Virus record (IMG/VR): IMGVR_UViG_3300025000_000053
Coordinates: 124,001 to 188,000 of that record
Reading direction: 5' to 3' (one strand)
Length of the DNA stretch: 64,000 nt
Every line of letters starts with the position of its first letter. The first letter of the stretch is position 1. Of this stretch, positions 44,776 through 64,000 are shown one piece after another. The notes beneath the pieces were generated by a model. That model ran no database searches. It worked only from the letters and a program-made list of their open reading frames with translations, and was not told the origin of the DNA. A program made the translations under genes and the position numbers.

Positions 44776-45204
44776 TTAATGTAATATCATTATTGAACTA
44801 TATTCAATAAAGTTTAGTTTAACTAAAAATTTAATAAAATATTCTTTATTAATATAACCAACTTCTATTTCTTCTATTATACAATCACTTCCTTTATCTT
44901 TTAATATCTTATTAATTATTTCAATTGTTGGTTGTTCATTATTTACTATATAATCTCTTACTAGTATATTAATTCTATTAAGTAAGTTAATATTTAATAT
45001 ATTAGTTTCTTCATTAATTGAAAATAATATTTCTAATCCTACTAAGTAGCCTGTTGGTGTTTCTATTACTTTTATATCTTTCTCTTCACTTTTTCCTAAA
45101 TTAATAAAGAAATCTTTAATTATATTAGTCTTAATATTATATACAATCTTATTGTATATATAGTTTATTAACATATCATTACCAATTGTATTTATTATAT
45201 TCAT
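44776..45204 (-). CDS. Hypothetical protein
   Basis: 142 aa; early motif at 45268-45277. Confidence 0.6.
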   Translation of the reverse strand: MNIINTIGNDMLINYIYNKIVYNIKTNIIKDFFINLGKSEEKDIKVIETPTGYLVGLEILFSINEETNILNINLLNRINILVRDYIVNNEQPTIEIINKILKDKGSDCIIEEIEVGYINKEYFIKFLVKLNFIEYSSIMILH

Positions 45205-45281
45205 AATTATTCATTCTCCCTTTTATAAAATTATTCATTATATCTTTTATATAATGTAACTTATATAATAATATATAAATA

Positions 45282-45935
45282 AAAAATTAGTATAAGGATA
45301 AATATATTTTCTATTATGAAAATATATTTATCCTTATACTAATCTCAAGATTATTTTTACATATAAAAATAGTGTAACTCCCTCTCCGATGGATATTATC
45401 AAGGGGGCAGTAGGGTGCTTCGTTTATATTTTTACAATATGCTTCGGTAATACTAGTGAATTGGTTTATTAATATTATTATTTGTATGTTTGCGTTAATG
45501 CTCTGTTTTATTTTTTATATTAACGATAAATGTTAATATTGGGCATATCAATTGATATGCCCAATATTTTTATCAATATGCTTTGTATTATAATTTATAT
45601 GTATATAATATTATATACATATTATTATTATTTAGAACCAGTTTAGATTAAATAAATTTATCTTTATGATATGTTTATGTATAAGTTTTTTTTAAATTTA
45701 GAATTAATCTTTCAGATTAATCAATACTTTTACCCTACTGCCCTTGAGCGATTTTCAATTATTGTCTGTTCTCACAGACAATAATCTCAATCATGGCCTA
45801 CAATTCACTCGCGTGAACGCCCCCTTGATCCAAAATCGTCAATATAAATTATGTAACGACGAATCATTACAATTGTAATTTATACTAACGATTTTACACA
45901 TCTTCATATTGATAAAAACATAAAGATGCTGGATT
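45282..45935 (-). ncRNA. Candidate large structured non-coding RNA (~650 nt)
   Basis: No ORF; late-type promoter at 45935-45946; terminator at 45287-45342; GNRA hairpins on the minus strand; long-range GC-rich pairings. Confidence 0.55.
45287..45342 (-). terminator. Strong intrinsic terminator closing the ORF-free unit
   Basis: 25-bp stem TTAGTATAAGGATAAATATATTTTC / GAAAATATATTTATCCTTATACTAA, followed on the minus strand by a U-tract. Confidence 0.75.
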
Positions 45936-45976
45936 AATTATATGTTCAATTAAATTATTTTTAATTTATTAAATTT

Positions 45977-46822
45977 TTAATAAAAAATAAAACCATTAGT
46001 ATCAAATAATTTAATCATATTATTAATAAACTTTCTAGTCATTTTATCTTTTATTTCATAATTATTTTTAAAATATATAATAAAAATCATTGATAAATTT
46101 TTACTATAAGTTTCTTGTAATATTTCTCTAAAAGATTTATCTCTATTTTTAAGTGATATCTCATCCCAATTTTTTATTATTGAATATGAGTATAATCCTA
46201 ATTTTCTTTTTTTCTTAGAAAATCCAGCTAGATGTCTAGAAAATATATAATCGGTATTAATATCACTATTCATTAATTTAAAATTATCAACCAAATTAAT
46301 ATAACTATTTAAATAATAAGGTTTCTTTTTAATATTCCCTATATTAAATGTAAAAAAAATATTATTACATTGACATGTATGTTCCTTATTTAAAATAATA
46401 ACATCTTCTAATATATAATTAGGATAAAATAAGTATAATACTGATAAGAAATTATCTAAAGGTAATTCAATAATAGGTTCACCTATTTCTTTTGATTGTA
46501 AGTTTATTTTAAATAATTTCTTATATTTATTATCTTTAAATAAAGTAAAATAACGATTATTATTTAAATCAACATGACTAATCATATTATTATCTTTATT
46601 TATTATATATTTATCATTCATAAATAAATGAATAAATTCAATATCTCTTAATAAAGCATTAAATATAACATCTAAAGAAGGTAAACCATCTTTTAATGGT
46701 GTAATAGTTATTTTATTATTTTTAATTGTATAACGCCACCATGTATAAGTTCTTCTAGTTAATCTCTTATAAGTAACAACTCTGTCTAAAATTGGATGTA
46801 TAAAATTCATAATAAAAATCAC
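45977..46822 (-). CDS. Hypothetical protein
   Basis: 281 aa ORF. Confidence 0.6.
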   Translation of the reverse strand: MIFIMNFIHPILDRVVTYKRLTRRTYTWWRYTIKNNKITITPLKDGLPSLDVIFNALLRDIEFIHLFMNDKYIINKDNNMISHVDLNNNRYFTLFKDNKYKKLFKINLQSKEIGEPIIELPLDNFLSVLYLFYPNYILEDVIILNKEHTCQCNNIFFTFNIGNIKKKPYYLNSYINLVDNFKLMNSDINTDYIFSRHLAGFSKKKRKLGLYSYSIIKNWDEISLKNRDKSFREILQETYSKNLSMIFIIYFKNNYEIKDKMTRKFINNMIKLFDTNGFIFY

Positions 46823-47341: not shown

Positions 47342-47609
47342 ACAAAGATTCAGAATTTATTATTCATCTATAATAAAATTATCACATTTATTATAAATAT
47401 TATTAACTAAAATATGAAAAAAATAATATCTGTGTTTCTCACAGATATTATTTAATATAAAGTTATTCAATTTCATAACAGAAAAATATTTGATTTTTTT
47501 GTAAGAAGCTTCTCTATACAAGTTATATATGAGGATTATCAAAATATCTCTCCACAATAATCCTTTTCTTATTCTATTGAATAATATATATTTAGAAACA
47601 CTAAAAATA

Positions 47610-48665: not shown

Positions 48666-49442
48666 TCATTTACATAATTTATCCTTAAATTCTTCAATAA
48701 AATCTTTTGATAAAATTTGATTATGATATATCCATTCCCATTTAACATTATCTTTAAACTCTAGTATAAAATCTTCTGATAATACTTGTTTAGAGCTTAT
48801 TAAATCCCATTTAACATTATCCTTAAATTTCCTAATAAAATCTTCAGATAAAATTTGGTAAAAACTTATGTCAATCCAATCAACCTTATCTTTAAATTCA
48901 CAAATAAATTTTTCAGATAAATTCTGATTACAACTTATTGACATCCAATCAACTTTATTTTGAAATTCTCTAATAAAGTTTTCTGATAAAATCTGACAAA
49001 AACTTATTTCAATCCAATCAACTTTATTCTTAAATTCTCGTATAAATTCTTCAGATAATTTCTGTTCTGAACTTATTGATATCCAATTAACTTTATTTTG
49101 AAATTCTCTAATAAAGTTTTCTGATAAAGTCTGATGATAACTTATTTTATTCCAATTCACTTTATATATAAATTCACGAATAAAATCTTCAGATAATTTC
49201 TGATGAGACCATATTTCAATCCAATCAACCTTATTCTTAAATTCTCGTATTAATTCCTCAGATAAAAATTGAGTACAACTTATAGCTTCCCAATCAATTT
49301 TATCATTATATTTTTTAATAAATTCTTCAGATAATTTTTTATACATAGATATATTTGCCCAATTAATTATATCTTCATTACATTCAATTATATCTATAAC
49401 AATATCATCTTTCTTAATAAGAATATCATTCATATTAAACAA
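48666..49442 (-). CDS. Tryptophan-repeat solenoid protein (10 x 23 aa)
   Basis: Consensus VDWxxISxxQxLSEEFIREFKNK; 69-bp DNA periodicity; early motif at 49479-49488. Confidence 0.85.
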   Translation of the reverse strand: MFNMNDILIKKDDIVIDIIECNEDIINWANISMYKKLSEEFIKKYNDKIDWEAISCTQFLSEELIREFKNKVDWIEIWSHQKLSEDFIREFIYKVNWNKISYHQTLSENFIREFQNKVNWISISSEQKLSEEFIREFKNKVDWIEISFCQILSENFIREFQNKVDWMSISCNQNLSEKFICEFKDKVDWIDISFYQILSEDFIRKFKDNVKWDLISSKQVLSEDFILEFKDNVKWEWIYHNQILSKDFIEEFKDKLCK

Positions 49443-50181: not shown

Positions 50182-50408
50182 TTAATAATAAAACCTCCTT
50201 TTATTTAATATTTTTTTCTCTAATTAAAAGTTGTTGAACAAATAATTAATGACTAATTTTATTAAATTTTTCAGGAGGTTACTGATGACAAATGCCTGGA
50301 CATCTGCTCGGTAATAACAAACTTTTGACCTTAATTAATTCTAAAGATAATTTAGAATTTAAGGTTTCTTTTGTTACCACACTCGTAGAGTATTTTTATC
50401 TGTTCACC

Positions 50409-50420
50409 AACATCTTTATA
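50409..50420 (+). promoter_or_regulatory. Putative late promoter AACA-N6-TA (representative copy, upstream of RNAP beta)
   Basis: Also at 2430, 3534, 27016, 50237, 56171 (+) and 10279, 23260, 24242, 29922, 35991, 38536, 45935 (-); matches the AR9 late consensus as I recall it. Confidence 0.7.
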
Positions 50421-50456
50421 ATAAAAAAATTATAAGGAAAGGTTGGTGAACAGATT

Positions 50457-53400
50457 TTGATTTTTATTTCTGATATACCACATTTAAAAACCTATAAGCA
50501 AAAAGTTCTATTACCTAAAGATGAGAAGTATCCTAGTATTAATAGTGTAGTTTTTATTATTAATAATAACATACAATCATCTATAGGACTATTAAACCAT
50601 CAATTTATTAAGAATAATAACATGTATCATTTTTATTTTATGGATCACGTATATAACGGTAAATTATTTAATAGAACTTTTAGAGTTTTATATCGTAATG
50701 AAAGAAATGATATTTATAATAATATAGAAAAAGAAGTTCGATTCATACAAACAGTTCTAGATTTACATTCAGTAAATAAGAAAAATATATATGTTGATTT
50801 AATAAAACATAATAGTTTATTCTTTCAATTAAGTAAAAAAGTTAATTTTACAATTCGTATTAAAAATTATATAGATTATCTAGATAAGTTAATTAATGAT
50901 AGTCATTTTAATCAGTATAAGTATAAAACTATTTGTATTGATATTAATAGTTGGGTTAGTGATTTAAAGACTCAAATAAAAGGTAAATTAAATTTTGATA
51001 ATCCAATATTTATTATTTATTATTGTATGTATAAATACCTTGAAAAATTTAAAGAACTAGGGGATATTAATATTATTTTCTATACTAATGATAGTGTATT
51101 AAGATTAAATCCTTCATTATGTGATAAAAGCTCATATTCTTTATTTAAGAAAGAGATTATCAAAGCGTCTCCTAAAAGTTTATTAGATATGAGTGAAGAT
51201 AATATTGAAAAAGTACTAAAAAGAAAAGATGTTGCTGATAAAATAATAGGATATCTTAATGACCAACATAGATTTGTTGGTGATGATAAAACTGAAGAAG
51301 ATGAAAATTTTGAAACTAGTATTGAAGATAAAGTAGATGAAATAATTGATGCTAATAAGTTAGATAATAATAGTAATGATGAGATGTATAGTGAAGTTTC
51401 AAAAGTTATTATTAATGATGATGAAATTATAAAAAAAATTCATATGATGAATCAAGAGAATAAAGTTGGTAGAAGTACAGCTTCTATTAAAAGGGACGAA
51501 GAATTAAGAAAAAGACAAAAAGAGATAATAAAAGATAAAATAGGAATAGATAATATCTATGAAACTAATAAAGAACAACTAGATATTCCTAAATTTGATG
51601 TTACAGATAAAGTTAATACTACTAATAAAAATGTAACTACTATAAGATATCCTCAATTTGAAAAAGCTTATAATGAAGTTCTTCATGAAAAGGATTTACT
51701 TAATAATATAAAATTTTTAAATGAAAAATCTATTCCAGTTTATATTAGAGGTATAGAACGAGTTGATTCATCCGATGAATTAAATTTAAAAGAAACATAT
51801 ACTTTTGATTTAGAAGATGAAAATAGAGTTAGGCATAAATTAAAATTTGATATCCCTAAATTTATAGATGATAAATTTTTATATCTTGGTGGTAATAAAA
51901 AGATTATTATGAAGCAATTATTTATGAAGCCAGTGGTTAAGACTGGACCAGATGAAGTACAGATTTGTACTAATTACAATAAGATGTTTATTAGACGCTA
52001 TGGTAATAAAATATCATCTAAAATAGAAAAAATGAGAAAATTATTATATGAACAAAAAGAAGGTAAAGGTATTAAAGTTAAATATGGTAATAATTTATCT
52101 ATTAATAACAAATATGATACTACTATAGAATATGATGAATTATCTAAAAGCTTTACTTATATCCGTATAGGTAAAACTGAATTTTATTTTAATCAAGATG
52201 ATGCTACAAATATAGTTAAAGATAAAAAAATAAAACTTAATCAAAATGAATTCTTATTAGGTCTTATTGAAAATGGTAAAAATCCAATACCTATTACAAT
52301 TGATAAAAATACTCAAAAAATAGGCACATCTTTCGATATAGTTGACTATATACTTTCTATGTTGACACAAGGATTAGTGCAAGATTTTGATGATACTAAA
52401 AGTGGTAAGAAATTTGTTTACACTAGAGCTTATATAATGGAAAGACATGTTCCAGTAGTTTTGTTAATTTCATTCTTAGAAGGTTTATCTACAGTAATAA
52501 AAAAAGCTAATATTAAACATTATTTTTCAGATAAAAGACCTAAAGATATTACTCATAATGAGGGAATAATTCAATTTAGTGACGGGTATTTAATATATGA
52601 AAAATATCCATTTGAAAATTCTTTATTAATGAATGCATTTGCAGATATTCCAACTAAAACTTTCGAATATGGTGAATTTGATTCAAAAGATGTTTATTTA
52701 TCTTTATTTGATACTTTATATGGTAATAGGATAATTGGTAATGCCTTTCTTAACTCATATGAATTTTTAATTGATCCTATTACAAGAGAAGTATTAGAAG
52801 ATTTAAACTATCCAACAGATTATGTTTCTTTAGTTTTATATGCTAATTCTTTATTAGCAACTAATTCATATATTAAAGAAAATAATATGAATTTATATAG
52901 AATAAGATCAAATGAACTGGTTAATGCCTTATTATATAAAGAAGTTGCTAATGCTTATATTAAGTATAGAACTACTTCTTTAAATAATAATCCTGTTAAA
53001 ATTTCTGTACCACAAGATGTTATTATTAAAAAGATACTTGTTGCACAGACAGTCGAGGACTACAGCACATTAAATCCTATAACCGAAGTCGAGAAATCCC
53101 GTATGATCAGTCCAAAAGGACATTCAGGAATGAACCTGGATGAAGCGTATACACAAGATAAAAGAGCATATGATAAAACGATGCTTGGTATAATAGCTAT
53201 GTCAACTTCACCGGATTCATCGTGTGGAGTAACAAGACAACTTACATTAGAACCCAATATAAAAAATCCGAGGGGATATATCGATATAAATGACGATAGA
53301 TTAGAAATTTTAAAAGATGCAAATCTATTTTCTCCAGCTGAATTATTATCTCCTCTCGGAAATACAAGGGATGAACTTGCTATTGTCCCACTATGTAGAA

Positions 53401-56093
53401 ATATATAGTTAAAAACTCTTCTAATTGTCGGGGACATCCTTAACGCTCTTATTACCAAACTAATATAGTAATATATTAGTGGTGAAGGGTAATGCCTTAG
53501 GTATGGTAACAAGATAAGAGATTGGGTTATCCGCAGCTAAGATTCCTATAAATTTTATAGGAATAAAGTTCAAAGACTATCGAAAGCATGTTTATTATTG
53601 ATATAAAATATAATAAACAGAAGTGAGTAGAGTAGGGAAACCGAAACGGAGAGCATCTGAACACATAATGGTGAAGATGATGATATAGTCTGTCACTTAT
53701 GGAAATCATAGGTGGTTCCTGGATAGCATAAGAACAGCGATAAATAAAACTTGTCGCATTATCTAGTAATAGATAAATAAAAAATCTCCTTAATTGTCGG
53801 GAAATCTCTTAGAGCCTAAAACTACTAAGTTATATTAGTAATAATATAATGGCTTAGTCTAATCAACTAAGGTATAGTAATAAGGTTTTAGGATTGAGTA
53901 ATCCGCAGCTAAGATTCTAATATATTAGAATAAAGTTCAACGACTATCGAAGGCAAACTTATTATAGAAATAAAAATATAATGAGTTTGTTAGTAGAGTA
54001 GGGCTCAAGTGAGTTCTGAAATGGGAGACTCCTTATTATTTAATAATAAGGATGAAGATATAGTCTTATATCCTAAGGAAACTTAGGGAAGTTCATAAAA
54101 GAACTGCATAGATTAACGATCTATGTGAAATAAATGGAGTGTAAAACAATCGAAACATATCGTACCTGTAGTTAAACAATCACCAGTTTTATTATCTAAT
54201 GGAGTTGAACAAGTTATTCAATATCACTTATCTGATGATTTTTCAGTTGTAGCTAAAGATGATGGTGAAGTTGTTGAGATAGATAGTGAAACTGGTTTAA
54301 TTATTATTAAATATAAAAATGGTGAAACTAAAGTAATTGATACAAGTCCAAAAGTTGTAAAAAATGGTAAACTAAATGCCCACTTATATGGTGACATATA
54401 TGTGAATCTTCTTTAATTGTCGGGGAAACTCTTAGAACTTTTTATTATATAATAAAAAGATTGAGTAATCCGCAGCCAAGTCTCATAGTAAAAAAAATAA
54501 AGTTCATGAAGAACTCTATTACAAAGATATTGGAAAATTTTATAAAAAATCAAATACTCCATGGTATTTTATTGTATAACAAAGTTGATGATGAGTTGAT
54601 CTGAGTTCTTTTTTAATAATTTTAAAATCTATATCTATCAAATATTTCTCTAATAAGGGAAGTGTTTCTTCAATGAATATATTAAAAAGTTCTAAGTTCT
54701 TTTTAGCTATGAAAAAGTCACTAATTTTTTTGATATCATTATTATATCTTTTTAGTTCATTTTCATACCTCTGGGTAAAGAATTTTTTAGTTAATTCTAT
54801 CGATATAGGATTACAAAACTCATCACTTAACTCATTAATATTCCTCATTATAATATCTTTGTAATTAATTTCTCCTTGCTTCATTTTATTTATCATTCCT
54901 TTCTTTTTTATATTACGTAAATAATATATAAATGAAAAATAATGAAATACTATGAGAAAGGTTCAACGACTATCCCTTTGGCTTTGAAATAAGCAATAGG
55001 AGTAGGGCTCAAGTGAGTGGGTGAGAATCCCTTAAATCGAAATAGGAAGCATCCTTATGAGATGAAGATATAGTCTAGTATCTTATCGAAAGATAAGGAA
55101 GTTCATAAGAGAACTGCATAGATTAACGACCTATGTGAATATATATCGGCTGGTGGTTTCTTCTTATCAAATAAATTAACATGTAATTTGAAAGTAGGGC
55201 AAAAAATAAAAAAACGAGATATATTAGCTTATGACAGTAACTTTTTTAGTAATAGTAAATTATATGGTAATAGATTCAATATTGGTTCATTACAGAAAAT
55301 AGCGTGTATGTCCTCATACTCAACATATGAGGATTCTACTTTTGTCACTAAGAAATTATGTGAAGATATGGCAACTGAGATTGTTATGGAAAAACCAGTT
55401 GTCTTAGGTAAAAATGCTAATGTTGATTATATTGTTGAAATAGGTCAAAATGTTAGTGTTGGTGATGAACTAATTAGATTTGAAGTTTCTTTTAAAGATG
55501 AATCACTAAATAAATTTCTTTCAAATATTGGAGATGAATTAAAAGAAGAAATTAAAGCAATGGGTAAAACACCTATTAAAACTAAATACTCTGGTGTAAT
55601 TGAAGACATTAAAGTATATTCAACTGTAGATGTAGAAGAACTATCTCCAACATTAAAAAAAATTGTTAATAATTATTATGATAGAATTAATAAGAAGAAA
55701 AAAATTATTAATAAATATAATAAAAGTGATTCTGTATATAAATGTGGTATAATGTTAAATGAACCTGTAACTAAGATTGAAACTAAAGATGGTAAAGTTA
55801 AAAGTCATACTGTTAATTCAGGAGTTTTAATTATATTTTATATTAAATATAAAGATACAGTTGGTGTTGGTGATAAGATATGTTTCTTTACTGCTTTGAA
55901 ATCTATTGTCGGTGAAGTTATCCCTGAAGGATATGAACCATATTCTTTATTTAGACCAGATGAGAAGATTTCTTCAGTGGTTGCTCCAGGAGCAGTAATG
56001 AATAGAATGACCCCTTCTGTTATTCTATCAATGTTCGGTAATAAAGTATTGATAGAATTAAAACGAAAATTAAAAGATATTTATGATGAATAA
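50457..56093 (+). CDS. Phage RNA polymerase beta part, spliced from 4 exons (50457-53372, 53722-53741, 54137-54368, 55149-56093; ~1370 aa); probably the virion RNAP
   Basis: KGHSGMN, STSPDSSCGVTRQL, junctions NTRD|DSIRTAM|SVKQSKHIVP and VVKNG|AGGFFL, VGDK, NRMTPS; lacks the extreme beta C-terminus; late promoter at 50409-50420. Confidence 0.9.
53373..53721 (+). mobile_element. Group I intron 1 of RNAP beta (349 nt, no ORF)
   Basis: P1 GGGAU|GA:UUGUCCC; P10 GAUAGCA:UGCUAUU; AAUUGUCGGG, AUCCGCAGC, GUUCAAAGACUA, GAUAUAGUC; ends in G. Confidence 0.9.
53722..53741 (+). other. 20-nt micro-exon GATAGCATAAGAACAGCGAT
   Basis: Bounded by the terminal G of intron 1 and the P1 of intron 2; encodes DSIRTA plus AT of the Met codon. 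Confidence 0.85.
53742..54136 (+). mobile_element. Group I intron 2 of RNAP beta (395 nt, no ORF)
   Basis: P1 GCGAU|A:UGUCGC; AAUUGUCGGG, AAUCCGCAGC, GUUCAACGACUA, GAUAUAGUC; ends ...AAAUG. Confidence 0.9.
54369..55148 (+). mobile_element. Group I intron 3 of RNAP beta (780 nt) carrying an antisense ORF in the P6 loop
   Basis: P1 GGU|A:UGCC; same core motifs; stem TCTCATAGTA (54481-54490) : TACTATGAGA (54948-54957) encloses a ~460-nt insert; ends ...AUAUCG. Confidence 0.88.
54540..54896 (-). CDS. Orphan ORF antisense within intron 3
   Basis: 118 aa (114 aa from the second ATG); RBS-like AAGGA; early-type promoter at 54921-54930; no LAGLIDADG, GIY-YIG or HNH motif visible. Confidence 0.65.
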   Translation of the reverse strand: MINKMKQGEINYKDIIMRNINELSDEFCNPISIELTKKFFTQRYENELKRYNNDIKKISDFFIAKKNLELFNIFIEETLPLLEKYLIDIDFKIIKKELRSTHHQLCYTIKYHGVFDFL

Positions 56094-56139: not shown

Positions 56140-56220
56140 TTTTATATTATCATTTTTTGTTTAATAAAAAAACATTAATTTAAACAATAAACTTTTAATG
56201 AAAGGGGTTGTAATAATAAA

Positions 56221-59200
56221 TTGGATATAAAAAATAAAACTAAAATTAAGACTAAGTCACCCACAGCATTAAATTGGTTTAAAAATGTTGGAAAATCTTT
56301 AGGTTATACTACAACTGAATTAATTGAAGAAATGATTCCTGCTCCAATAGAATTTATTAAAAGTAATACTCAAACATTTAAAAATTTTTATGATGAATTA
56401 CGTAAAAATAAATCAATAAATAAAAAATTGTCGGATCAAATGATAAAGAATGAATATATCAATATAGGTCAAACAGCAATAAAAAATGCTTTAAAAGATA
56501 TTAAATCAGGTAAGATTTATAACAAAGATAGACAAGATGAAATATTTAATGATGATATTGATTTTGAATTTGGTGATGATATAAATTTTGATAATGAAGA
56601 TTATAAAGTTTCATCAGATACAACATCTGAATCAAGTACAAGTAGTTCTTCACCTACTATCAACAGAGTGAATATTACTTCTAATATCAATAGAAATAAT
56701 CCTATGGTTAGAGCTGTAGAAAGACAAACTGAAGCTATATATAATACAACTCAAGCTAGTGATAAAATATCAATATCTTTAGCTACTAATCATATGATGA
56801 TAAATAGAAAAGTAGGGGAAGATATAAATACAGGTTTAAGTGCTATAAATGATAATTTAAGTTTACTTGTTAATTTTCAAAGTGAATCAATGACTAAATA
56901 TATAGGTACTACATTTAAATACTATGAAGAAAGTTTGAATGTATTTAACAATATTCATGAGCAAATGAAAAAAGGTACTATTACTGTAGATGATAAGACA
57001 GGTAAAGAAAAATTTGATCCTATGGAATCAGTTTTTCTTTCTAGAGGTGGGTTAAATCTATCAGGTTATGCTAATTTAATTAAAAAACAGTTTGGTACAG
57101 CTGTAGACCAAGATATGATTTTATCTCAATTAAAATATATGTTATCAGATAAAGACCAATTAAAATTTTTAGCTGCTTCACCTATAAGTTTTTTATCTAC
57201 TAAGATAGTAACTGCATTTATTCCGTCTATGTTAAAACAAACATTAACTAGTATGAATAAAAGTTTTGAAAATTTCTTCCCAGCTTTATTAATGAAAGCT
57301 AATAGAATGGTTGGTTCTCAAAATCCAATACTTAATTTCTTAGGTCAAGTTTTTGGTATAAATGTAAAACAGAAATCATCTGTTGATTTATCTCAATATA
57401 ATAAAGGTAAAACTGCTTTTGATGGTTATACAAAGAAAGCTATAACAGAAGTAATACCAGGATATTTAAGAAAGATTTTAGCTGCATTAAATGGTAAAGA
57501 AGAAGTTGCTTTTGATTATGATAATGGTGTTTTTAAATCTATGGATTCTATGAATAAAGATTTTCAAAGTACTGTTAATAGAAGTATATTAAGTAGTTTT
57601 TCTGATGTTATGAATGAAATAAAAGACAAAGCAAATGCTTTTAATATTCAAAATGATGAGGAACGAAAGAAATTTAATAAAGACTTAGAAAGTTTTTTCT
57701 TAAAACTTCCTAGTTTAAATAAATTAATAAATCCTATAAGAACTAAAGATAATGATGGTAATAGTATAAATGAATTAAAAACTGTACATGATTTTGGTAG
57801 TGAAGAAATGAATAATTTCTTTAGACAATTAGTACTATCACTTGATAAAGGTGATATTCAGAAAATGTTTGGTACAGATGTATTAAATGCTAGAAAAAAT
57901 AAAGAAAAAATATATAATGATGCTGAACTTAATCCATTAAGATATAACGCAGCTTTAATTAATAATCAATTAAATTTTGATGATCATATTAAGAGAAATA
58001 AATATAATAAAAGTCAATTTGAAGTAAAAAAAGGTTTTGGAGTTTTATCTAAAACCGATCAATTTAATAAAATTGATTTGGACTATTTACGTGATATTAA
58101 AGAAATTTTATTAAGAGGTATTAAAGTATTCCCTGTAACTCAGATAATTAATCCAGATGGTTCAATATCTCAACCAAGTTTTGAATATCATGATACACAA
58201 TTAAGAAGAATGAGAAGTCAGGAAAGAGAAAGAGATAGAAAATTTAAAGTAAAACCCCAACAAGATACTGAAATTACACCTGAATTAGAAAGGATTAATA
58301 GACAGCAGGGTAAAAGAATAGTTAATAGATTATCAGATTCAGATATAACTCCTGAAGAAATGAGAGAACAAATTAGAGTATTTGATGAACAAAGAAGAAG
58401 TGATTCAGAAAGAGATAGAAGACAACAAAGTGGTTGGTTAGGAAGTTTTATATCTGGGGATATGCAAACTAAATATAATTTATTAAGAGAAAAAGTAAGA
58501 GATATCTTTAATACACCTGCTAAATTACTTAATACTGTATTTAAAAAAATAGATGAAACTATGTTTAAAATAGTCTTTGGTGATGATGACAAAGGTAATT
58601 CTTCTTTTCTTAATAGAACATGGTCTTTAATGCAAAGTAATTTTCAAAAAATGTCTGAATGGTTTAAAGATAAAATATTTAATCCTATTAGAGAATCTTT
58701 ATTTGGACCAAATGGTTTTATAACTAAATTAAAGAATTCTGAATTATTTACAAAAATTAAATCTAATTTTAGTAAATTAACAGATTTTTTATTTGGACTA
58801 AAAGATTCTACTGGTAAAAGAAAAGGTGGGATGTTTTCTGATACATCTAACCATCTTTTAGATATATTTGATAGTGCTAAATACTATTTTACAGGTAAAG
58901 CTTATATAAATAGATCAGGATTATCTTTTCCTACTAATAATAAAAGTGTATTTGGTGAACTAAAATCAATGTTTTCAGGTTTTAAAGATACTATAAAATC
59001 TTATTTATTTGGTAGAAGGAATCAAGATGGGAATATACAAGAAACAGGTATTCTTTCAACAGCTATTAATAGTATAAAGGATGGTTTTCAAAACTTTTCA
59101 AATGCTATTTTTGGTCCACAGAAAATTGGTGGTAAGGATAATAAAAATTATGTAATAGTTAGTGATTTATTTAAGAAGTTTAAAGAAAGATTACCTAAAT

Positions 59201-62200
59201 CATTATCTTTTGGTATTATCGGAGCTGGTAGTGGGTTATTAATGGGTGGTAAGTTAGGTTTATTAGGTTCATTATTTCTTCCTGGTGGTCCTATTGGTGG
59301 AGCTATTGTTGGTACCACAGTTGGTTTCTTATCTCAATCAGATAGATTTAAAGATTGGTTATTTGGTTCTAAAGATATTAATAATAATCGTATTGGTGGT
59401 TTTATTAATAAGAAAACTCAAGAGTTCTTTAAAAAAAATAAAGTTGGTATCGTTGGTGGTGCCAGTTTAGGAGCTCTTAAATCTATATTAGGATTTGGAT
59501 TATTACCCTCGTTCTTTTTACCTGGTGGTCCTATTGGTGGTGCATTATTTGGTGCCGGTTTATCAATGTTAGTTAGTTCAGAGAAATTTAAGAAATTTAT
59601 GTTTGGGGATTTACAAGCAGACGGAAATAGAATTGGTGGAATAGCTCAAAAAATATTTGGTAAAGTTGATAGAAATAAAGCTAAAAAGATGTTTGGTAAT
59701 GTTAGTGCTGGTATAATAGGTGGAGCTGGTATAGGATTCGTAACTAGTAAATTTGGTTTATTAGGTGCCGCTTTATTACCAGGTGGTCCTTTAGGTGGAG
59801 CCTTATTAGGTGCCGCCGCCGGTATTGCTCTATCTTCTGAAAAATGGAAGAAGTTAGTATTTGGTGAATTTGATGATGAAACTCAATTAAGAAAAGGTGG
59901 TTTATTAGGTAAAGTTATTAATTGGACTAATTTAGAAATTCTTCAACCTATTAAAATTAAATTACAAGAAATAAATTTAAATGTTAAAGAATGGTTTACA
60001 AGAAGTATTGCTAACCCATTTCTTAATGCAATTGATCCAATTAAACATGAAATAAAATTAATGATACGTAGTTTAAAAGATAATTTTGTAGAAGGTTGGA
60101 CTAGTTTTAAAGTTTTTATTGGTAATGTATTTGAAAAACATGTAGGTGCACCTTTTGGTAAATTTATGGAAGATAGAGTTATGAAACCATTAAGAGGATT
60201 TATATCAAAAATATTAGGTGGGATTGGTAGAATTGTTGGTAGTATTGTATCAGCACCATTTAAAGGTATGGAAGGTTTATCAAGAGGATTAAATAGAAAA
60301 CATATGCAAGCTGGTTTAGATGCATATGTTGAAGAAGGTTGGAGTGATTTATTAGATTTTAAAGGTAGAAGACAACGTGGAGAAAAAATAGGTTTCTTTG
60401 GTGGATTAAAGAAATTTAAAGATATTTATTTTAATAGAGAAGCTAGAGAGGACGCTAAAAATAGTAGTAAAGGTGCTCCATATTCTAAGCAATTAGAAAT
60501 TGATAGACAAAAACGTGAAGAAGAGGCTAATACTAAATTTTCCAATGAAAGAGAAAACATAAGAAAAATGTGGAGTTCTTGGAGAGATAGAAAAAGAGCT
60601 GGTGCTGATAATAATTATGATAATTTTAGTCCTGATGGTAAAGTTGTTAAAAACCAGTATTACCCTCCAGATGAACAAAGAGTAGATAGAAATTCACCTA
60701 ATCCAATTAATGATGTTACAGATGATATAACTAGAAGAACTGGTAGGAAAGGAAGAAGAGGTAAACCTAATCCTAAACCTGTAAATGATCAAAGTGTAAT
60801 TATATTACCTGGTTCAGTTCAACAAGATGACACATCAACGATTGTTGATGATGTTACAGATGTTATCTATAGAAGAACTGGAAATAGATCAAATAGTAGA
60901 AGAGGAAAAAAATCAACAACATCCCCACAACCTATTATTAATCAAAATGAACAACAATCTGAAGAGTCATCACAACCAATTATTAATCAAAATCAACCAC
61001 CTAGTAAAAAACCATCTACTACAAGAATTAAATCATCTAATGAATTATTACTACAGATAGCTACTGATGTAAGAACTATTGCTAAAGAAGTTAATGGTCA
61101 ATTAGATGGTGTTGGTGGTAATGTTTATAAAATAAGAAAATTAATTCAATCACAACAAGGTATATCAGATGAAGATTTAAGTGGTGAATCGAATAGAGAT
61201 AGGATTGGATTCTTTGGTAAAATAAGAAGAATGTTATATAGACCAATAGATACTATTAAAGAGAAAGTATTAGGTTCTATTAAATTTGTAACTGATAAAA
61301 TTACTTCTGTAGGTAAAACAATATTTGATTTTAGTAAAACAATATTGGTTACTATACCTAAACAAATATTTTCAACTATGTACAATATAGGTTCTGAAAT
61401 ATTATCAATCGGAAAAGAAACTTTTCTTAATATAATTAAATTACCTGGTCAATTATTGAATTTATTTGCTCAAACCACAAAAATATTTGCTGAATCAATT
61501 AAAATGATATCACCTGCTATTGGGGAAACTCTTAAAGGTGTTGCCAAATTATTCTCAGGTACAATGGGAATGATCGCTGAATCAATGATAGGTGTTGGTA
61601 AAGGTATTGGTCAAGTTGCTTTTAGTATTGGTGAGGCTATTGGCTCAATAATATCTACTTTTAGTAAAGGTTTGATGAGTGTAGTTCCAGTAGTAGGTAA
61701 ATTTTTATTGACATCTAGTAAGATGATTATGGATTTCGGATTTGGTATAATTAAGAATGTTGGTGGTTTATTAACAAGTATTACTAAATCTTTATTTAGT
61801 ATAGCAACATCACCAATTAGATTTGCAGCGGATATGCTTGGTAGAGCTGTAGGTATTAAGAGATCTGAAATGTATATTACAGGTGGTGTTATTGATGTAG
61901 TTAGAAGGATTGGTGATAATACCTCTGACTTTACACAAAAACCAAAAGATGATAATAGAAGTAATATATTTGATAATTCAGATAATGTTGTTATGCCAGT
62001 AAGAGTAGATGGTGTTACTTCAGTTAGAATTGTTGGTTCGGATAGACCAATTCCTATTTATTTTAATATGAATATGAATCAAAATCAACGTAGAAGTAAT
62101 TCATTTAATAATAATATATCAGGATTGCCTAATTCAATTAATACGGGAAATAATAATTATTTAGTTTCTTCATTAACGAATGCACTTGATATATTTGATA

Positions 62201-64000
62201 CAGAAAATGATAAAGAAGAAGAAAATAAACGAATAGAAAAAGAAAGAGAAAAAGAATTATATCAAAACCAACTCGAAGTTTCTAAAAAAACATCAGGGTT
62301 CTTAATAGCTCAAAATAATTTAAGAAATGAAAAAGATTTTACTAGAAATAATGAAATAAGACAGACATCATTATTGCAACAAATTGCAAATATATCAAAA
62401 AATCAACATGAAAGTTGGTTATCACTATTTGGTAAGAAAGGTATTTTAACAGTTGCCTTTTTATTAACACTACCATATTTAGAAAAAATATTTAAATGGA
62501 TTAAGGGATTTTTTGGTGGTGATGATGATACTGGTATTGGAGGTGGTATATCTACTGTTGTTAAAAAGGCATTAGGTTTAATAGAAAAAAACGATGGTAG
62601 TCGTAAAGATGCTGAAGATAAAGATATTATAAATGCTCAGGGTAGAGAAAGTTATATTAAAGGTACCGCTGTTTTAGCAAGAAGATATAGTCCTAAGTTA
62701 GTAAAAGCAATAGAAAAAGGTAAAGATAAAATAGCGAATTCTAATATTGTAAAAAATGTTACTAGATATGGTTCAAATTTAAAAAATGCTTTTAATCCAT
62801 CAAGTACTGTCAGAGGTGGAACTATTGATGCATCTTTCAAGGTTACTGATGATACTGGTAAAATAATTAAAGAAGTTACTGTAAATGATTCAAATAAAAT
62901 TATTCAAGCTATTAAGAATACTTTTGAGAGATTTTTTAATAATTCATTTGTTAAGAAACTATTAGGTTCATCTGCTGGTAAAATAGCTAGTAAAATAATA
63001 AATGAAGTTACTAAAGTATTAAATTATAAGACTATGTTTAATAATATGGCTAAATTATCAAAGGCTTTTTTAAGAACAGGTGTTATTATGTTTGCTGCCC
63101 CTGTAATAATATCTTGGGATTTAGCTACAGGTGCCTATGAAGCATCAAGAATATTTAAAGTTGCAAATGAATCTGTTGATGGTAAAATGCAAATAGCTTC
63201 TTCTGTAACTAAAGCATTAATAGGATTCTTCCCAGTAATTGATATTTTATCAGAAATATTTAATGAGCAGACTGGTATGAGTTTAAAACAATATGTTGCA
63301 ACAACTATTTATTCAATGTTAGCATCAACAGAAGAAATTAAAAAATTAGAAGTAGATAAAAAAGCTTTTGAGCAAGATAAAAATGAGTATAATGAAAAAA
63401 ATAAAACTAAACTATCATTAAATGCATATAATGATATGAAAAATAAAACGTTCTTCCAGAAATTTATTAGTAATCCCTTATCAAAAACTAAAGATTTTAT
63501 TGTGAAAACAGGAAGCAGTATCAGTAATAGTCTATCTGAAAATTGGGATAATTTTAAAGGTGGTTTTAGTAAAGGTTTTAAAATGATGGGTGATGATGTT
63601 TCTAATGCAATGTCTAAAACACCTGAAATGATTAAAACATTTAAGGATACATTATCTAAAAATTGGAAAGAACTAAAAGATAATAGCGAAAAACAATGGA
63701 ATAATATGAAAGGCTTTGTTTCTAAATCTTTAAAGGATACTAATAATACGTTGGGTATATTATTTGGATATAAAGATGAAGAAGGAAATGATGTTAGTTT
63801 TACAGAAGGATTTAATAAAGGATTTAAAGGACTTATAAAAAGCATTAGAGATAGTTGGAAAGATATTGGTGATGGTGCTAAATTTTATTGGGATAATACA
63901 AAAGCATTCACAGAAAGAAAATGGAAAGAATTAAGTGAGAAATTACCAAAGGCATTTGAAAGTTTAGATAACTGGTTAGGTGAACTATTAGGATTTAAAG
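56221..64000 (+). CDS. Giant virion protein (tape-measure/tail-associated-like), >2590 aa, 3'-truncated by the window edge; absent from the ORF track
   Basis: RBS AAAGGGG and TTG at 56221 (MDIKNKTKIKTKSPTALNWF). Frame open wherever spot-checked, through to 64000. Helical composition, Gly-rich LPGGP(I/L)GGA repeats, late promoter at 56171-56182. Confidence 0.75.
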   Translation, partial: MDIKNKTKIKTKSPTALNWFKNVGKSLGYTTTELIEEMIPAPIEFIKSNTQTFKNFYDELRKNKSINKKLSDQMIKNEYINIGQTAIKNALKDIKSGKIYNKDRQDEIFNDDIDFEFGDDINFDNEDYKVSSDTTSESSTSSSSPTINRVNITSNINRNNPMVRAVERQTEAIYNTTQASDKISISLATNHMMINRKVGEDINTGLSAINDNLSLLVNFQSESMTKYIGTTFKYYEESLNVFNNIHEQMKKGTITVDDKTGKEKFDPMESVFLSRGGLNLSGYANLIKKQFGTAVDQDMILSQLKYMLSDKDQLKFLAASPISFLSTKIVTAFIPSMLKQTLTSMNKSFENFFPALLMKANRMVGSQNPILNFLGQVFGINVKQKSSVDLSQYNKGKTAFDGYTKKAITEVIPGYLRKILAALNGKEEVAFDYDNGVFKSMDSMNKDFQSTVNRSILSSFSDVMNEIKDKANAFNIQNDEERKKFNKDLESFFLKLPSLNKLINPIRTKDNDGNSINELKTVHDFGSEEMNNFFRQLVLSLDKGDIQKMFGTDVLNARKNKEKIYNDAELNPLRYNAALINNQLNFDDHIKRNKYNKSQFEVKKGFGVLSKTDQFNKIDLDYLRDIKEILLRGIKVFPVTQIINPDGSISQPSFEYHDTQLRRMRSQERERDRKFKVKPQQDTEITPELERINRQQGKRIVNRLSDSDITPEEMREQIRVFDEQRRSDSERDRRQQSGWLGSFISGDMQTKYNLLREKVRDIFNTPAKLLNTVFKKIDETMFKIVFGDDDKGNSSFLNRTWSLMQSNFQKMSEWFKDKIFNPIRESLFGPNGFITKLKNSELFTKIKSNFSKLTDFLFGLKDSTGKRKGGMFSDTSNHLLDIFDSAKYYFTGKAYINRSGLSFPTNNKSVFGELKSMFSGFKDTIKSYLFGRRNQDGNIQETGILSTAINSIKDGFQNFSNAIFGPQKIGGKDNKNYVIVSDLFKKFKERLPKSLSFGIIGAGSGLLMGGKLGLLGSLFLPGGPIGGAIVGTTVGFLSQSDRFKDWLFGSKDINNNRIGGFINKKTQEFFKKNKVGIVGGASLGALKSILGFGLLPSFFLPGGPIGGALFGAGLSMLVSSEKFKKFMFGDLQADGNRIGGIAQKIFGKVDRNKAKKMFGNVSAGIIGGAGIGFVTSKFGLLGAALLPGGPLGGALLGAAAGIALSSEKWKKLVFGEFDDETQLRKGGLLGKVINWTNLEILQPIKIKLQEINLNVKEWFTRSIANPFLNAIDPIKHEIKLMIRSLKDNFVEGWTSFKVFIGNVFEKHVGAPFGKFMEDRVMKPLRGFISKILGGIGRIVGSIVSAPFKGMEGLSRGLNRKHMQAGLDAYVEEGWSDLLDFKGRRQRGEKIGFFGGLKKFKDIYFNREAREDAKNSSKGAPYSKQLEIDRQKREEEANTKFSNERENIRKMWSSWRDRKRAGADNNYDNFSPDGKVVKNQYYPPDEQRVDRNSPNPINDVTDDITRRTGRKGRRGKPNPKPVNDQSVIILPGSVQQDDTSTIVDDVTDVIYRRTGNRSNSRRGKKSTTSPQPIINQNEQQSEESSQPIINQNQPPSKKPSTTRIKSSNELLLQIATDVRTIAKEVNGQLDGVGGNVYKIRKLIQSQQGISDEDLSGESNRDRIGFFGKIRRMLYRPIDTIKEKVLGSIKFVTDKITSVGKTIFDFSKTILVTIPKQIFSTMYNIGSEILSIGKETFLNIIKLPGQLLNLFAQTTKIFAESIKMISPAIGETLKGVAKLFSGTMGMIAESMIGVGKGIGQVAFSIGEAIGSIISTFSKGLMSVVPVVGKFLLTSSKMIMDFGFGIIKNVGGLLTSITKSLFSIATSPIRFAADMLGRAVGIKRSEMYITGGVIDVVRRIGDNTSDFTQKPKDDNRSNIFDNSDNVVMPVRVDGVTSVRIVGSDRPIPIYFNMNMNQNQRRSNSFNNNISGLPNSINTGNNNYLVSSLTNALDIFDTENDKEEENKRIEKEREKELYQNQLEVSKKTSGFLIAQNNLRNEKDFTRNNEIRQTSLLQQIANISKNQHESWLSLFGKKGILTVAFLLTLPYLEKIFKWIKGFFGGDDDTGIGGGISTVVKKALGLIEKNDGSRKDAEDKDIINAQGRESYIKGTAVLARRYSPKLVKAIEKGKDKIANSNIVKNVTRYGSNLKNAFNPSSTVRGGTIDASFKVTDDTGKIIKEVTVNDSNKIIQAIKNTFERFFNNSFVKKLLGSSAGKIASKIINEVTKVLNYKTMFNNMAKLSKAFLRTGVIMFAAPVIISWDLATGAYEASRIFKVANESVDGKMQIASSVTKALIGFFPVIDILSEIFNEQTGMSLKQYVATTIYSMLASTEEIKKLEVDKKAFEQDKNEYNEKNKTKLSLNAYNDMKNKTFFQKFISNPLSKTKDFIVKTGSSISNSLSENWDNFKGGFSKGFKMMGDDVSNAMSKTPEMIKTFKDTLSKNWKELKDNSEKQWNNMKGFVSKSLKDTNNTLGILFGYKDEEGNDVSFTEGFNKGFKGLIKSIRDSWKDIGDGAKFYWDNTKAFTERKWKELSEKLPKAFESLDNWLGELLGFK

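What the first reader, a model, noticed from the sequence alone, without database searches (positions are those of the whole stretch)
45282..45946. Candidate ~650-nt structured non-coding RNA with its own late promoter and terminator
Seen: the largest ORF-free gap in a densely coding genome. On the minus strand it starts at AACA-TATAAT-TA (45946-45935) and ends at a 25-bp terminator (45287-45342). Two hairpins have GNRA loops only on the minus strand: a 12-bp stem with GAGA (45758-45785) and a 5-bp stem with GCGA (45804-45817). The GC-rich segment ATCAAGGGGGCAGTAGGGT (45398-45416) has two overlapping complements, ACCCTACTGCCCTTGA (45732-45747) and GCCCCCTTGAT (45819-45829), suggesting alternative long-range folds. 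There are perfect 34-bp (45535-45568) and 26-bp (45597-45622) palindromes. I recognise no tRNA, tmRNA, RNase P or intron core. Inference: a novel large phage RNA. The alternative is a replication origin or packaging locus.
Basis: partly seen in the sequence, partly recalled or inferred. Interest (0 to 1): 0.85.

Follow-up and report, generated by a model that had tools for sequence, protein, structure and literature searches.

The report
Unclassified structured RNA gene in jumbo phage
A 650-base gene-free stretch of an AR9-like giant phage from groundwater most likely makes a highly folded non-coding RNA late in infection. It matches no known RNA family, is found in only three closely related phages, and has no expression data.

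Summary
The window is a 22% GC, roughly 250-kb jumbo phage from groundwater, with multisubunit RNA polymerase closest to the AR9/PBS1 and Staphylococcus jumbo phages.

The two AR9 promoter motifs behave as promoters here. AACA-N6-TA lies 26-47 nt before 12 start codons, and TATATATTAT lies 25-72 nt before 8-9. The locus therefore reads as late promoter (TSS about 45935), about 650 nt with no conserved ORF, terminator hairpin (45346-45282), then an early promoter for the next gene.

Only three lineages carry the element. Across them 152 predicted pairs are 94% canonical, and 16 show compensatory changes against 0-5 in slid controls. G-U outnumbers A-C 29 to 4 on the minus strand.

The conserved part is a GC-rich core of about 250 nt, clamped by a long-range helix (45748-45733 with 45415-45398) around a variable AT-rich insert. 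Both perfect palindromes lie in that insert and are not conserved.

Rfam, ARAGORN and my own covariance model find no known family and no wider relatives. No RNA reads exist.

Verdict: a credible but unproven new structured RNA. Its function is unknown, and a cis-acting DNA or untranslated-region role is not excluded.

The parts
45935..45946 (-). AR9-type late promoter motif AACA-N6-TA. The predicted transcription start is the last A, at 45935.
   Evidence: It matches the AR9 late consensus AACA-(6N)-TA/G (PMC5312081). In this window the same motif lies 26-47 nt upstream of 12 same-strand start codons, against 4 for the other-strand control. It is conserved in L003 and L127.
45897..45932 (-). 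5' hairpin H1 (14 bp).
   Evidence: Alifold helix with 2 compensatory and 5 one-sided changes across three lineages.
45831..45896 (-). Long 5' hairpin H2: a 21-bp base plus an 8-bp apical stem (45852-45871).
   Evidence: (I5). The apical stem has 3 compensatory pairs and is 100% canonical.
45819..45829 (-). G-rich strand S1, the alternative partner of S3.
   Evidence: It forms a perfect 11-bp complement with 45398-45408 in the window (I25). There is one compensatory G-C to U-A change in L127 and a mismatch in L003. Duplex energy is -23.4 kcal/mol against -13.2 and -14.4.
45804..45817 (-). Short hairpin H3, with loop GCGA on the minus strand.
   Evidence: The loop is GAGA in L003. In L127 the stem is rebuilt with different bases and carries an AAA/CAAA loop.
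45757..45786 (-). Hairpin H4: a 12-13 bp stem with loop GAGA. It is closed by a 4-bp helix, 45789-45792 with 45750-45753.
   Evidence: Three adjacent compensatory pairs. The loop stays GNRA (GUGA) in both relatives.
45733..45748 (-). Strand S2 of the conserved long-range clamp. It pairs with S3 at 45398-45415.
   Evidence: A 16-bp helix, 98% canonical, with one G-C to A-U compensatory change. Duplex energy is -25 to -27 kcal/mol in all three lineages.
45702..45722 (-). Hairpin H5 (9 bp, GAA/GAAA loop).
   Evidence: One compensatory and one one-sided change.
45432..45701 (-). Variable AT-rich insert enclosed by the clamp. It holds the 26-bp palindrome (45597-45622), the 34-bp palindrome (45535-45568) and an invariant block GCAAACAUACA at about 45483-45493.
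   Evidence: Identity between lineages is lower, with many indels. The 34-bp palindrome is missing from L003 as a 49-nt indel but is 100% identical in L127.
45365..45431 (-). 3' core. It contains S3 (45398-45415) and a purine-rich segment, part of which (45373-45381) pairs with 45795-45802.
   Evidence: Strongly conserved in all three lineages. The long-range helices come from alifold.
45282..45346 (-). Intrinsic terminator: a hairpin of about 27 bp plus a U-run.
   Evidence: Called by the terminator scan. It has 3 compensatory and 4 one-sided changes. It belongs to the same class as the palindromic hairpins that directly precede four other early promoters in the window.
45268..45277 (-). Early-promoter motif TATATATTAT for the next gene (44776-45204). 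It marks the downstream boundary and is not part of the RNA.
   Evidence: It resembles the AR9 early consensus AAATATATATTAT-(6N)-G. The motif lies 25-72 nt upstream of 8-9 start codons in the window and is conserved in L003 and L127.

Best explanation
The locus is a separate transcription unit of an AR9-like jumbo phage. It produces a non-coding RNA of about 650 nt from the minus strand.

The phage's second (non-virion type) RNA polymerase starts at an AACA-N6-TA late promoter 31 nt after the stop codon of the upstream gene. Transcription ends at a long hairpin with a U-run, which directly abuts the early promoter of the next gene.

The RNA folds as follows:
- two 5' hairpins;
- a GC-rich core (45841-45696 plus 45431-45365), built from three short hairpins, two of them GNRA-capped in the window, and held together by a 16-bp long-range clamp and a second 7-bp long-range helix;
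- a variable AT-rich domain of about 270 nt, looped out by the clamp.

Shown: sequence anatomy, promoter and terminator logic within this genome, conservation, compensatory changes and strand asymmetry.

Inferred: that the RNA is made and is the functional product, and that it acts in trans as a folded RNA or RNA-protein particle. A possible partner is the upstream 281-aa protein, whose homologues in more distant phages are always followed by an analogous structured, promoter-led non-coding stretch. The molecular function is not known.
For: - No ORF longer than 44 aa. Indels in relatives are not multiples of three.
- The late and early promoter motifs are validated by their position relative to genes in the window and by the AR9 literature.
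- The RNA polymerase beta subunit is closest to Listeria LPJP1, Bacillus PBS1/Goe21 and Staphylococcus jumbo phages.
- The terminator is of the genome's usual type and sits in the usual position.
- Conservation is comparable to the flanking genes.
- Alifold on three lineages gives 152 pairs, 94% canonical, with 16 compensatory pairs against 0-5 for slid controls.
- The sense strand folds better than the antisense strand in all three lineages, and the consensus energy is -110 against -93 kcal/mol. G-U cells number 29 and A-C cells 4.
- The H4 loop stays GNRA.
- The clamp energy is conserved.
- The gap is the most structured in the window.
- Homologues of the 281-aa protein in L131, L207 and L209 are each followed by (A/T)ACA-N6-TA plus 295-571 nt of ORF-free sequence that folds strongly (z -5.4, -7.7, -9.8), although the downstream genes differ.
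Against: - There is no transcript evidence. The only RNA runs from the same study are tiny and hold nothing.
- With only three lineages at 73-78% identity, compensatory counts cannot be turned into a proper covariation statistic.
- The alifold structure was derived from the same sequences it is scored on.
- Early transcripts from the upstream operon probably read into the region, so it could function as a 3' untranslated region.
- The internal palindromes look like terminators for the opposite strand.
- The positional analogues in more distant phages share no detectable sequence or covariance-model similarity.
- The 281-aa protein gives no functional clue.
Confidence: 0.55

Rival explanations
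1. The locus is an untranslated, cis-acting part of neighbouring messages rather than a stand-alone RNA gene. It would be a long structured 3' end that stabilises or insulates the upstream early operon (small ORF, 169-aa and 281-aa genes). Alternatively it would be a long leader that lets late transcription reach downstream genes through a regulated terminator.
For: - An early promoter at 47590 and no terminator before 45346 imply read-through from the upstream operon.
- In L131 and L207 the terminal hairpin is followed within about 30 nt by the next gene's ribosome-binding site, with no visible promoter between. That gene must therefore be reached by read-through.
- The linkage is to the upstream gene family, not to any downstream gene.
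Against: - In the window and both close relatives the next gene has its own early promoter right after the terminator.
- The 12 late 5' leaders scored in this window are only 26-47 nt.
- A dedicated late promoter placed after the stop codon is conserved in four lineages.
- The elaborate clamp and GNRA-capped hairpins go well beyond a simple stabilising 3' hairpin.
Confidence: 0.2
2. The locus is a DNA-level element, either a replication origin or a packaging (pac) site. It might be transcription-activated, as at T4 R-loop origins or with ColE1 RNA II, where a promoter-driven structured transcript hybridises to an AT-rich unwinding region.
For: - A promoter is followed by G-clusters and then an AT-rich stretch of about 270 nt carrying 26- and 34-bp perfect palindromes.
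- Folding z-scores are equally strong on both strands.
- The 34-bp palindrome is 100% identical in two lineages whose flanks differ, as expected for a protein-binding or cruciform site.
Against: - There are no iterons or other direct-repeat families of note.
- There is no change in GC or AT skew at 45.5 kb. The only turn is at the gene-orientation switch near 50.2 kb.
- The palindromes are the least conserved parts, absent or degenerate in relatives.
- The same helices hold 29 G-U against 4 A-C cells, which a symmetric DNA cruciform would not favour.
- The unit ends in a strong terminator.
- Read contigs show no molecule ends here beyond assembly breaks at the palindrome.
Confidence: 0.13
3. 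The locus is a decayed remnant, such as a dead gene, a degenerate group I intron or a mobile insert, with no present function.
For: - The phage carries at least two, and probably three, group I introns with GC-rich cores in an AT-rich genome.
- One of them scores far below Rfam's threshold, so a divergent intron could be missed.
- The 49-nt palindrome indel shows that small insertions come and go here.
Against: - There is no Intron_gpI match even at E up to 10.
- The flanking ORFs are complete and are not exons of one gene.
- Conservation equals that of coding neighbours.
- Compensatory changes preserve the helices.
- The promoter and terminator are conserved in all three lineages.
Confidence: 0.05

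Closest known systems
Large 'ornate' bacterial and phage RNAs of unknown function (GOLLD, ROOL, OLE; cryo-EM shows homo-oligomers, PMC12286853)
   Same: The size class (about 600 nt) is the same. It is non-coding and phage-borne, with many helices, GNRA loops and long-range pairings. The function is likewise unknown.
   Different: There is no match to any Rfam model at gathering score or at E up to 10. Only about 250 nt is well conserved. It is known from three near-identical lineages rather than a broad family. There is no tRNA neighbourhood. Oligomerisation was not tested.
AR9 late transcription units (non-virion RNA polymerase promoters AACA-N6-TA/G; PMC5312081)
   Same: The promoter motif and spacing are identical. 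The motif's placement before genes in this window mirrors AR9. Early promoters resemble the AR9 early consensus, and terminators lie at operon ends.
   Different: The AR9 late units reported in the passages of PMC5312081 that I read are protein genes, one tRNA gene and some antisense RNAs. This unit has no ORF and a structured product of about 650 nt. The phage shares only 33-37% RNA polymerase beta identity with isolates.
Transcript-primed origins (ColE1 RNA II; T4 oriF/oriG R-loop origins). This comparison rests on my own knowledge.
   Same: A promoter-driven, structured non-coding transcript several hundred nt long, with G-clusters, runs through an AT-rich region.
   Different: This unit ends in a strong terminator. 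There is no skew or read-end signal of an origin. The AT-rich part is the least conserved.
phi29 packaging RNA (pRNA)
   Same: It is a phage-encoded structured RNA whose distant 5' and 3' segments pair. It could in principle act in virion assembly at late times.
   Different: There is no Rfam match. It is about four times longer and comes from an unrelated phage group. pRNA is made from an early promoter (own knowledge).

Membership tests
Any Rfam 15 family (including GOLLD, ROOL, OLE, HEARO, raiA, 6S, RNase P, phage pRNA, riboswitches) | A covariance-model match at or above the family's gathering score. | tested here: not met
   The whole window at gathering score gave only two group I introns at 53368-54088. 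The region 45100-46100 at E up to 10 gave only hairpin-type chance matches far below threshold.
tRNA / tmRNA | Cloverleaf or tRNA-like domain detectable by ARAGORN. | tested here: not met
   No tRNA or tmRNA gene anywhere in the window.
Group I intron | Conserved catalytic core (P3-P8, J8/7) and insertion within a gene whose exons flank it. | tested here: not met
   There is no Intron_gpI hit at E up to 10 in the region, although even a weak intron elsewhere is picked up. The flanking ORFs are complete, with a stop codon, and the downstream gene has its own promoter and ribosome-binding site.
AR9-type late transcription unit | AACA-(6N)-TA/G motif with the last base as start site. | tested here: met
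   The motif is at 45946-45935 and is conserved in L003 and L127. The same motif lies 26-47 nt before 12 genes in the window, against 4 in the control.
AR9-type late transcription unit | An RNA 5' end mapped at the predicted start in infected cells. | not testable with these tools
   No RNA run holds the sequence. The three metatranscriptome runs listed from the same study are 2-3 million letters each; the two that were laid gave nothing.
Structured non-coding RNA gene (generic) | Helices maintained by compensatory substitutions beyond what relatedness alone gives. | tested here: inconclusive
   16 of 152 pairs carry two-sided changes, against 0-5 in slid controls, and 94% of pairs are canonical against about 43%. 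Only three distinct sequences exist, so no significance test is possible.
Structured non-coding RNA gene (generic) | Strand specificity: G-U tolerated, A-C avoided, and loop motifs that make sense on one strand only. | tested here: met
   G-U 29 against A-C 4. The sense strand folds better in all three lineages. H4 keeps a GNRA loop on the minus strand.
Replication origin / pac site | Iterons or initiator boxes, a skew inflection, or molecule ends. | tested here: not met
   No meaningful direct repeats, no skew change at the locus and no ends in DNA contigs. Contigs are a weak test, and recombination-driven replication would leave no skew.

The most novel reading that the evidence does not exclude
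The 281-aa protein family and the structured RNA encoded just downstream of it form a protein-RNA module that is conserved by position in a clade of AR9-like jumbo phages. The RNA evolves fast in sequence, and the window's version is an enlarged, clamp-closed form. The module would represent a new class of large late phage RNA. It could be an RNA-protein particle or a self-assembling RNA used in virion assembly, genome replication or host takeover.
Probability: 0.2. Interest if true: 0.75.

Novelty: new variant of a known kind. Interest (0 to 1): 0.55.

Why it matters
Jumbo phages with their own multisubunit RNA polymerases are studied almost entirely through their proteins. A dedicated late promoter driving a large, clamp-closed, GNRA-decorated RNA would add a non-coding component to their late programme. 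It would also add one more large structured phage RNA to a short list (GOLLD, ROOL) whose functions remain open.

The positional link to one protein family gives a concrete handle: co-expression, pull-down, and cryo-EM of the RNA alone and with the protein.

As a by-product, the analysis shows that AR9-type early and late promoter motifs are used by an uncultivated groundwater phage that shares only about 35% polymerase identity with AR9-like isolates.

Tried and rejected
- **Known RNA families.** Rfam at gathering score and at E up to 10, and ARAGORN, gave nothing.
- **Nucleotide search of isolate phages**, near and distant modes, gave no match.
- **Exact-pattern scans.** Core 18-20-mers in IMG/VR and JGI metagenomes returned only the three known lineages plus four GC-rich chance hits. 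A 14-mer gave 120 or more chance hits and was useless.
- **Wider relatives.** A 23-sequence RNA polymerase beta alignment fetched 70 jumbo-phage loci. nhmmer and a calibrated covariance model of the 5' core found no copy in 1.4 Mb, nor in the syntenic gaps of L131, L207 and L209 with filters off.
- **Pairwise local alignment** of the window's RNA with those syntenic gaps scored no better than shuffles. I treat them as positional analogues, not homologues.
- **RNA evidence.** No listed RNA run holds the stretch, and laying reads gave zero RNA contigs.
- **The 281-aa neighbour.** Pfam, PHROGs, PDB sequence search, the ESM Atlas, and an AlphaFold model (pLDDT 66) searched with Foldseek against the PDB gave no informative match.
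- **The 34-bp palindrome as a repeated mobile element.** It occurs once in the window. It occurs once elsewhere in IMG/VR, in an unrelated 44% GC contig where it is an ordinary bidirectional terminator.
- **Recoded stop codons** as the cause of the large apparent gaps were rejected. 56191 onward is one open frame in the standard code.

Full report
**What the window is**

The window is 22% GC. It is identical to part of IMG/VR contig IMGVR_UViG_3300025000_000053, which is 249,853 bp and comes from a groundwater metagenome.

It encodes a multisubunit RNA polymerase beta subunit at 50457-53408. Two tandem group I introns follow it. It also encodes a dCMP deaminase.

By protein search, the polymerase is closest (33-37% identity) to Listeria phage LPJP1, to Bacillus phages Goe21 and PBS1, and to the Staphylococcus jumbo phages. 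This is the AR9-like group. There is no nucleotide match to any isolate phage.

**The observation**

The gap 45205-45976 has no ORF above 44 aa.

It is the largest ORF-free gap once two things are set aside. One is a gap that holds two group I introns (53409-54539). The other is an apparent gap that is really one ORF of more than 2603 aa running off the window.

The stretch folds about 14 standard deviations better than shuffles on either strand. It is the most structured of the eight intergenic gaps tested.

**Transcription signals**

The AR9 paper gives the late consensus as AACA-(6N)-TA/G, with the last base as the start site. It gives the early consensus as AAATATATATTAT-(6N)-G (PMC5312081). 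I tested whether these motifs behave as promoters in this genome.

| Motif | Position relative to genes | Control (same sites read on the other strand) |
|---|---|---|
| AACA-N6-TA (late) | 26-47 nt upstream of 12 same-strand start codons | 4 |
| TATATATTAT (early) | 25-72 nt upstream of 8-9 start codons | 2 |

Five of the early motifs are directly preceded by a long hairpin, usually a perfect palindrome, plus a U-run. These are terminator-promoter junctions.

The locus fits this grammar in order:
- The upstream 281-aa gene stops at 45977.
- AACA-TATAAT-TA follows at 45946-45935.
- The terminator hairpin occupies 45346-45282.
- The early motif at 45277-45268 lies 64 nt before the next gene.

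All three signals are conserved in both close relatives. This is the only strong late motif in the window with no ORF behind it.

**Relatives**

Protein and DNA searches found only three distinct lineages that carry the element. All come from two samples of the same kind of groundwater community.
- The window itself.
- L003, from contigs of 187-233 kb. Its flanking protein is 86% identical.
- L127, from a 9.9-kb contig. Its flanking protein is 79% identical.

Nucleotide identity across the element is 73-78%, similar to the flanking genes.

**Structure**

RNAalifold was run on the three sequences, from the predicted start to the end of the terminator. It gives 152 pairs, 94% of them canonical. 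Sixteen pairs have changes on both sides, against 0-5 when the 3' partners are slid by 1-3 columns. The clearest cases are:

- **H4 (45757-45786).** Three adjacent compensatory pairs. The loop changes from GAGA to GUGA, so it stays GNRA.
- **Apical stem of H2.** Three compensatory pairs.
- **Terminator.** Three compensatory pairs.
- **Long-range clamp S2:S3 (45748-45733 with 45415-45398).** One G-C to A-U exchange. Duplex energy is -25 to -27 kcal/mol in all three lineages.
- **H3.** The loop is GCGA in the window and GAGA in L003. In L127 the stem is rebuilt with other bases and carries an A-rich loop that is not GNRA.

There is one compensatory event in L127 and a mismatch in L003. A switch between the two pairings is therefore possible but not conserved.

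**Strand**

- The minus-strand RNA folds better than its complement in all three lineages, by 14, 11 and 2.5 kcal/mol.
- The consensus energy is -110 kcal/mol for the minus strand against -93 for the plus strand.
- The helices hold 29 G-U cells and only 4 A-C cells.

All three results favour a minus-strand RNA over a symmetric DNA structure.

**The palindromes**

Both perfect palindromes lie in the AT-rich domain of about 270 nt that the clamp loops out.

- The 34-bp palindrome is missing from L003 as a clean 49-nt indel. It is 100% identical in L127.
- The 26-bp palindrome is degenerate in both relatives.
- Their U-rich tails are on the plus strand, and I found no plus-strand promoter motif.
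- The 22-nt core of the 34-bp palindrome recurs in an unrelated 44% GC phage contig as an ordinary bidirectional terminator.
- A similar palindrome ends the analogous unit in L207.

I regard the palindromes as accessory and leave them unexplained.

**Wider search**

I aligned 23 polymerase homologues at 39-88% identity. With that alignment I fetched 70 loci of related jumbo phages, with 10 kb on each side.

Neither nhmmer nor a calibrated covariance model of the 5' core finds another copy in 1.4 Mb.

The upstream 281-aa protein does have remote homologues at 27-37% identity. In each lineage examined the homologue is followed by the same arrangement:
- an (A/T)ACA-N6-TA motif 20-35 nt after its stop codon;
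- 295-571 nt without an ORF that fold well above shuffles (z -5.4, -7.7 and -9.8);
- a terminal hairpin.

This holds for L131, L207 and L209, although the downstream genes are unrelated to one another. These stretches show no significant sequence or covariance-model similarity to the window's RNA. I call them positional analogues.

The protein itself has no Pfam, PHROG, PDB or Atlas lead. Its AlphaFold model (pLDDT 66) has no Foldseek match.

**Expression**

Only DNA runs hold the sequence. The three metatranscriptome runs listed from the same study are 2-3 million letters each, and the two that were laid (X5, X6) gave nothing. Expression is therefore untested.

**Interpretation**

The best reading, at about 0.55, is a genuine late-transcribed, structured non-coding RNA of a new and very narrowly distributed family. 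It has a conserved core of about 250 nt and a dispensable AT-rich insert.

| Rival reading | Weight | Main point |
|---|---|---|
| Cis-acting untranslated region of neighbouring messages | about 0.2 | Read-through from the upstream operon is likely. |
| DNA-level origin or packaging site, possibly transcript-primed | about 0.13 | No iterons, no skew change and no read ends. The strand asymmetry also argues against it. |
| Decayed remnant | about 0.05 | Conservation, compensatory changes and retained signals argue against it. |

The mechanism beyond "folded RNA, perhaps working with the 281-aa protein" is inference only.

Noticed in passing
window 53368-53713 and 53732-54088 (+): Two tandem group I introns (61 and 60 bits) directly follow the RNA polymerase beta ORF 50457-53408. 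Homologues in related phages are about 1380 aa and uninterrupted, so the gene is split here. A minus-strand 118-aa ORF (54540-54896) with its own early-promoter motif at 54930 lies in the same gap.
   Followed up: partly
window 18929-19221 (-): This is a probable third group I intron. The Rfam hit is weak (17.7 bits, E 0.04) but includes a GAUAUAGUCUAA core. It lies in the 378-nt, 35% GC gap between ORFs 19320-19955 and 17535-18941.
   Followed up: partly
window 56191-64000 (+): A single open reading frame of more than 2603 aa runs off the end of the window. The ORF lister omits it, which makes the region look ORF-free.
   Followed up: partly
window 7872, 10807, 17481, 33521, 37838, 45277, 47590, 49488, 54930 (-): A shared early-promoter-like motif (tttattTATATATTAT) lies 25-72 nt before start codons. 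Five copies are directly preceded by long, mostly perfect, palindromic terminators. The motif resembles the AR9 early consensus.
   Followed up: yes
window 48666-49442 (-): The 258-aa gene matching phrog_3532 (E 3e-78) is absent from the otherwise collinear relative L003, so it is an indel or a mobile gene.
   Followed up: no
window 50182-50456: The divergent intergenic region at the gene-orientation and skew switch folds strongly (z about -9). It has two late-promoter motifs (50237, 50409). A 12-bp inverted repeat (CTGTTCACCAAC / GTTGGTGAACAG) brackets the promoter and ribosome-binding site of the polymerase beta gene.
   Followed up: no
L131 8108-8403 (-), L207 4799-5218 (+), L209 4841-5411 (+), L130 7479-8302 (-): In L131, L207 and L209 the ORF-free, strongly folding stretch lies directly after the homologue of the 281-aa protein. 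Each has a long GC-clamped hairpin with a G-rich strand (GGGUAGGG-like) and then a purine-rich tail. L130 has a similar gap of about 825 nt near the polymerase gene, but no homologue of the 281-aa protein was found beside it. Homology to the window's RNA is not demonstrable.
   Followed up: partly
L206 6653-6674: The 22-nt core of the window's 34-bp palindrome occurs identically in an unrelated 44% GC viral contig. There it is flanked by A- and T-runs as a bidirectional terminator. This is probably convergence.
   Followed up: partly
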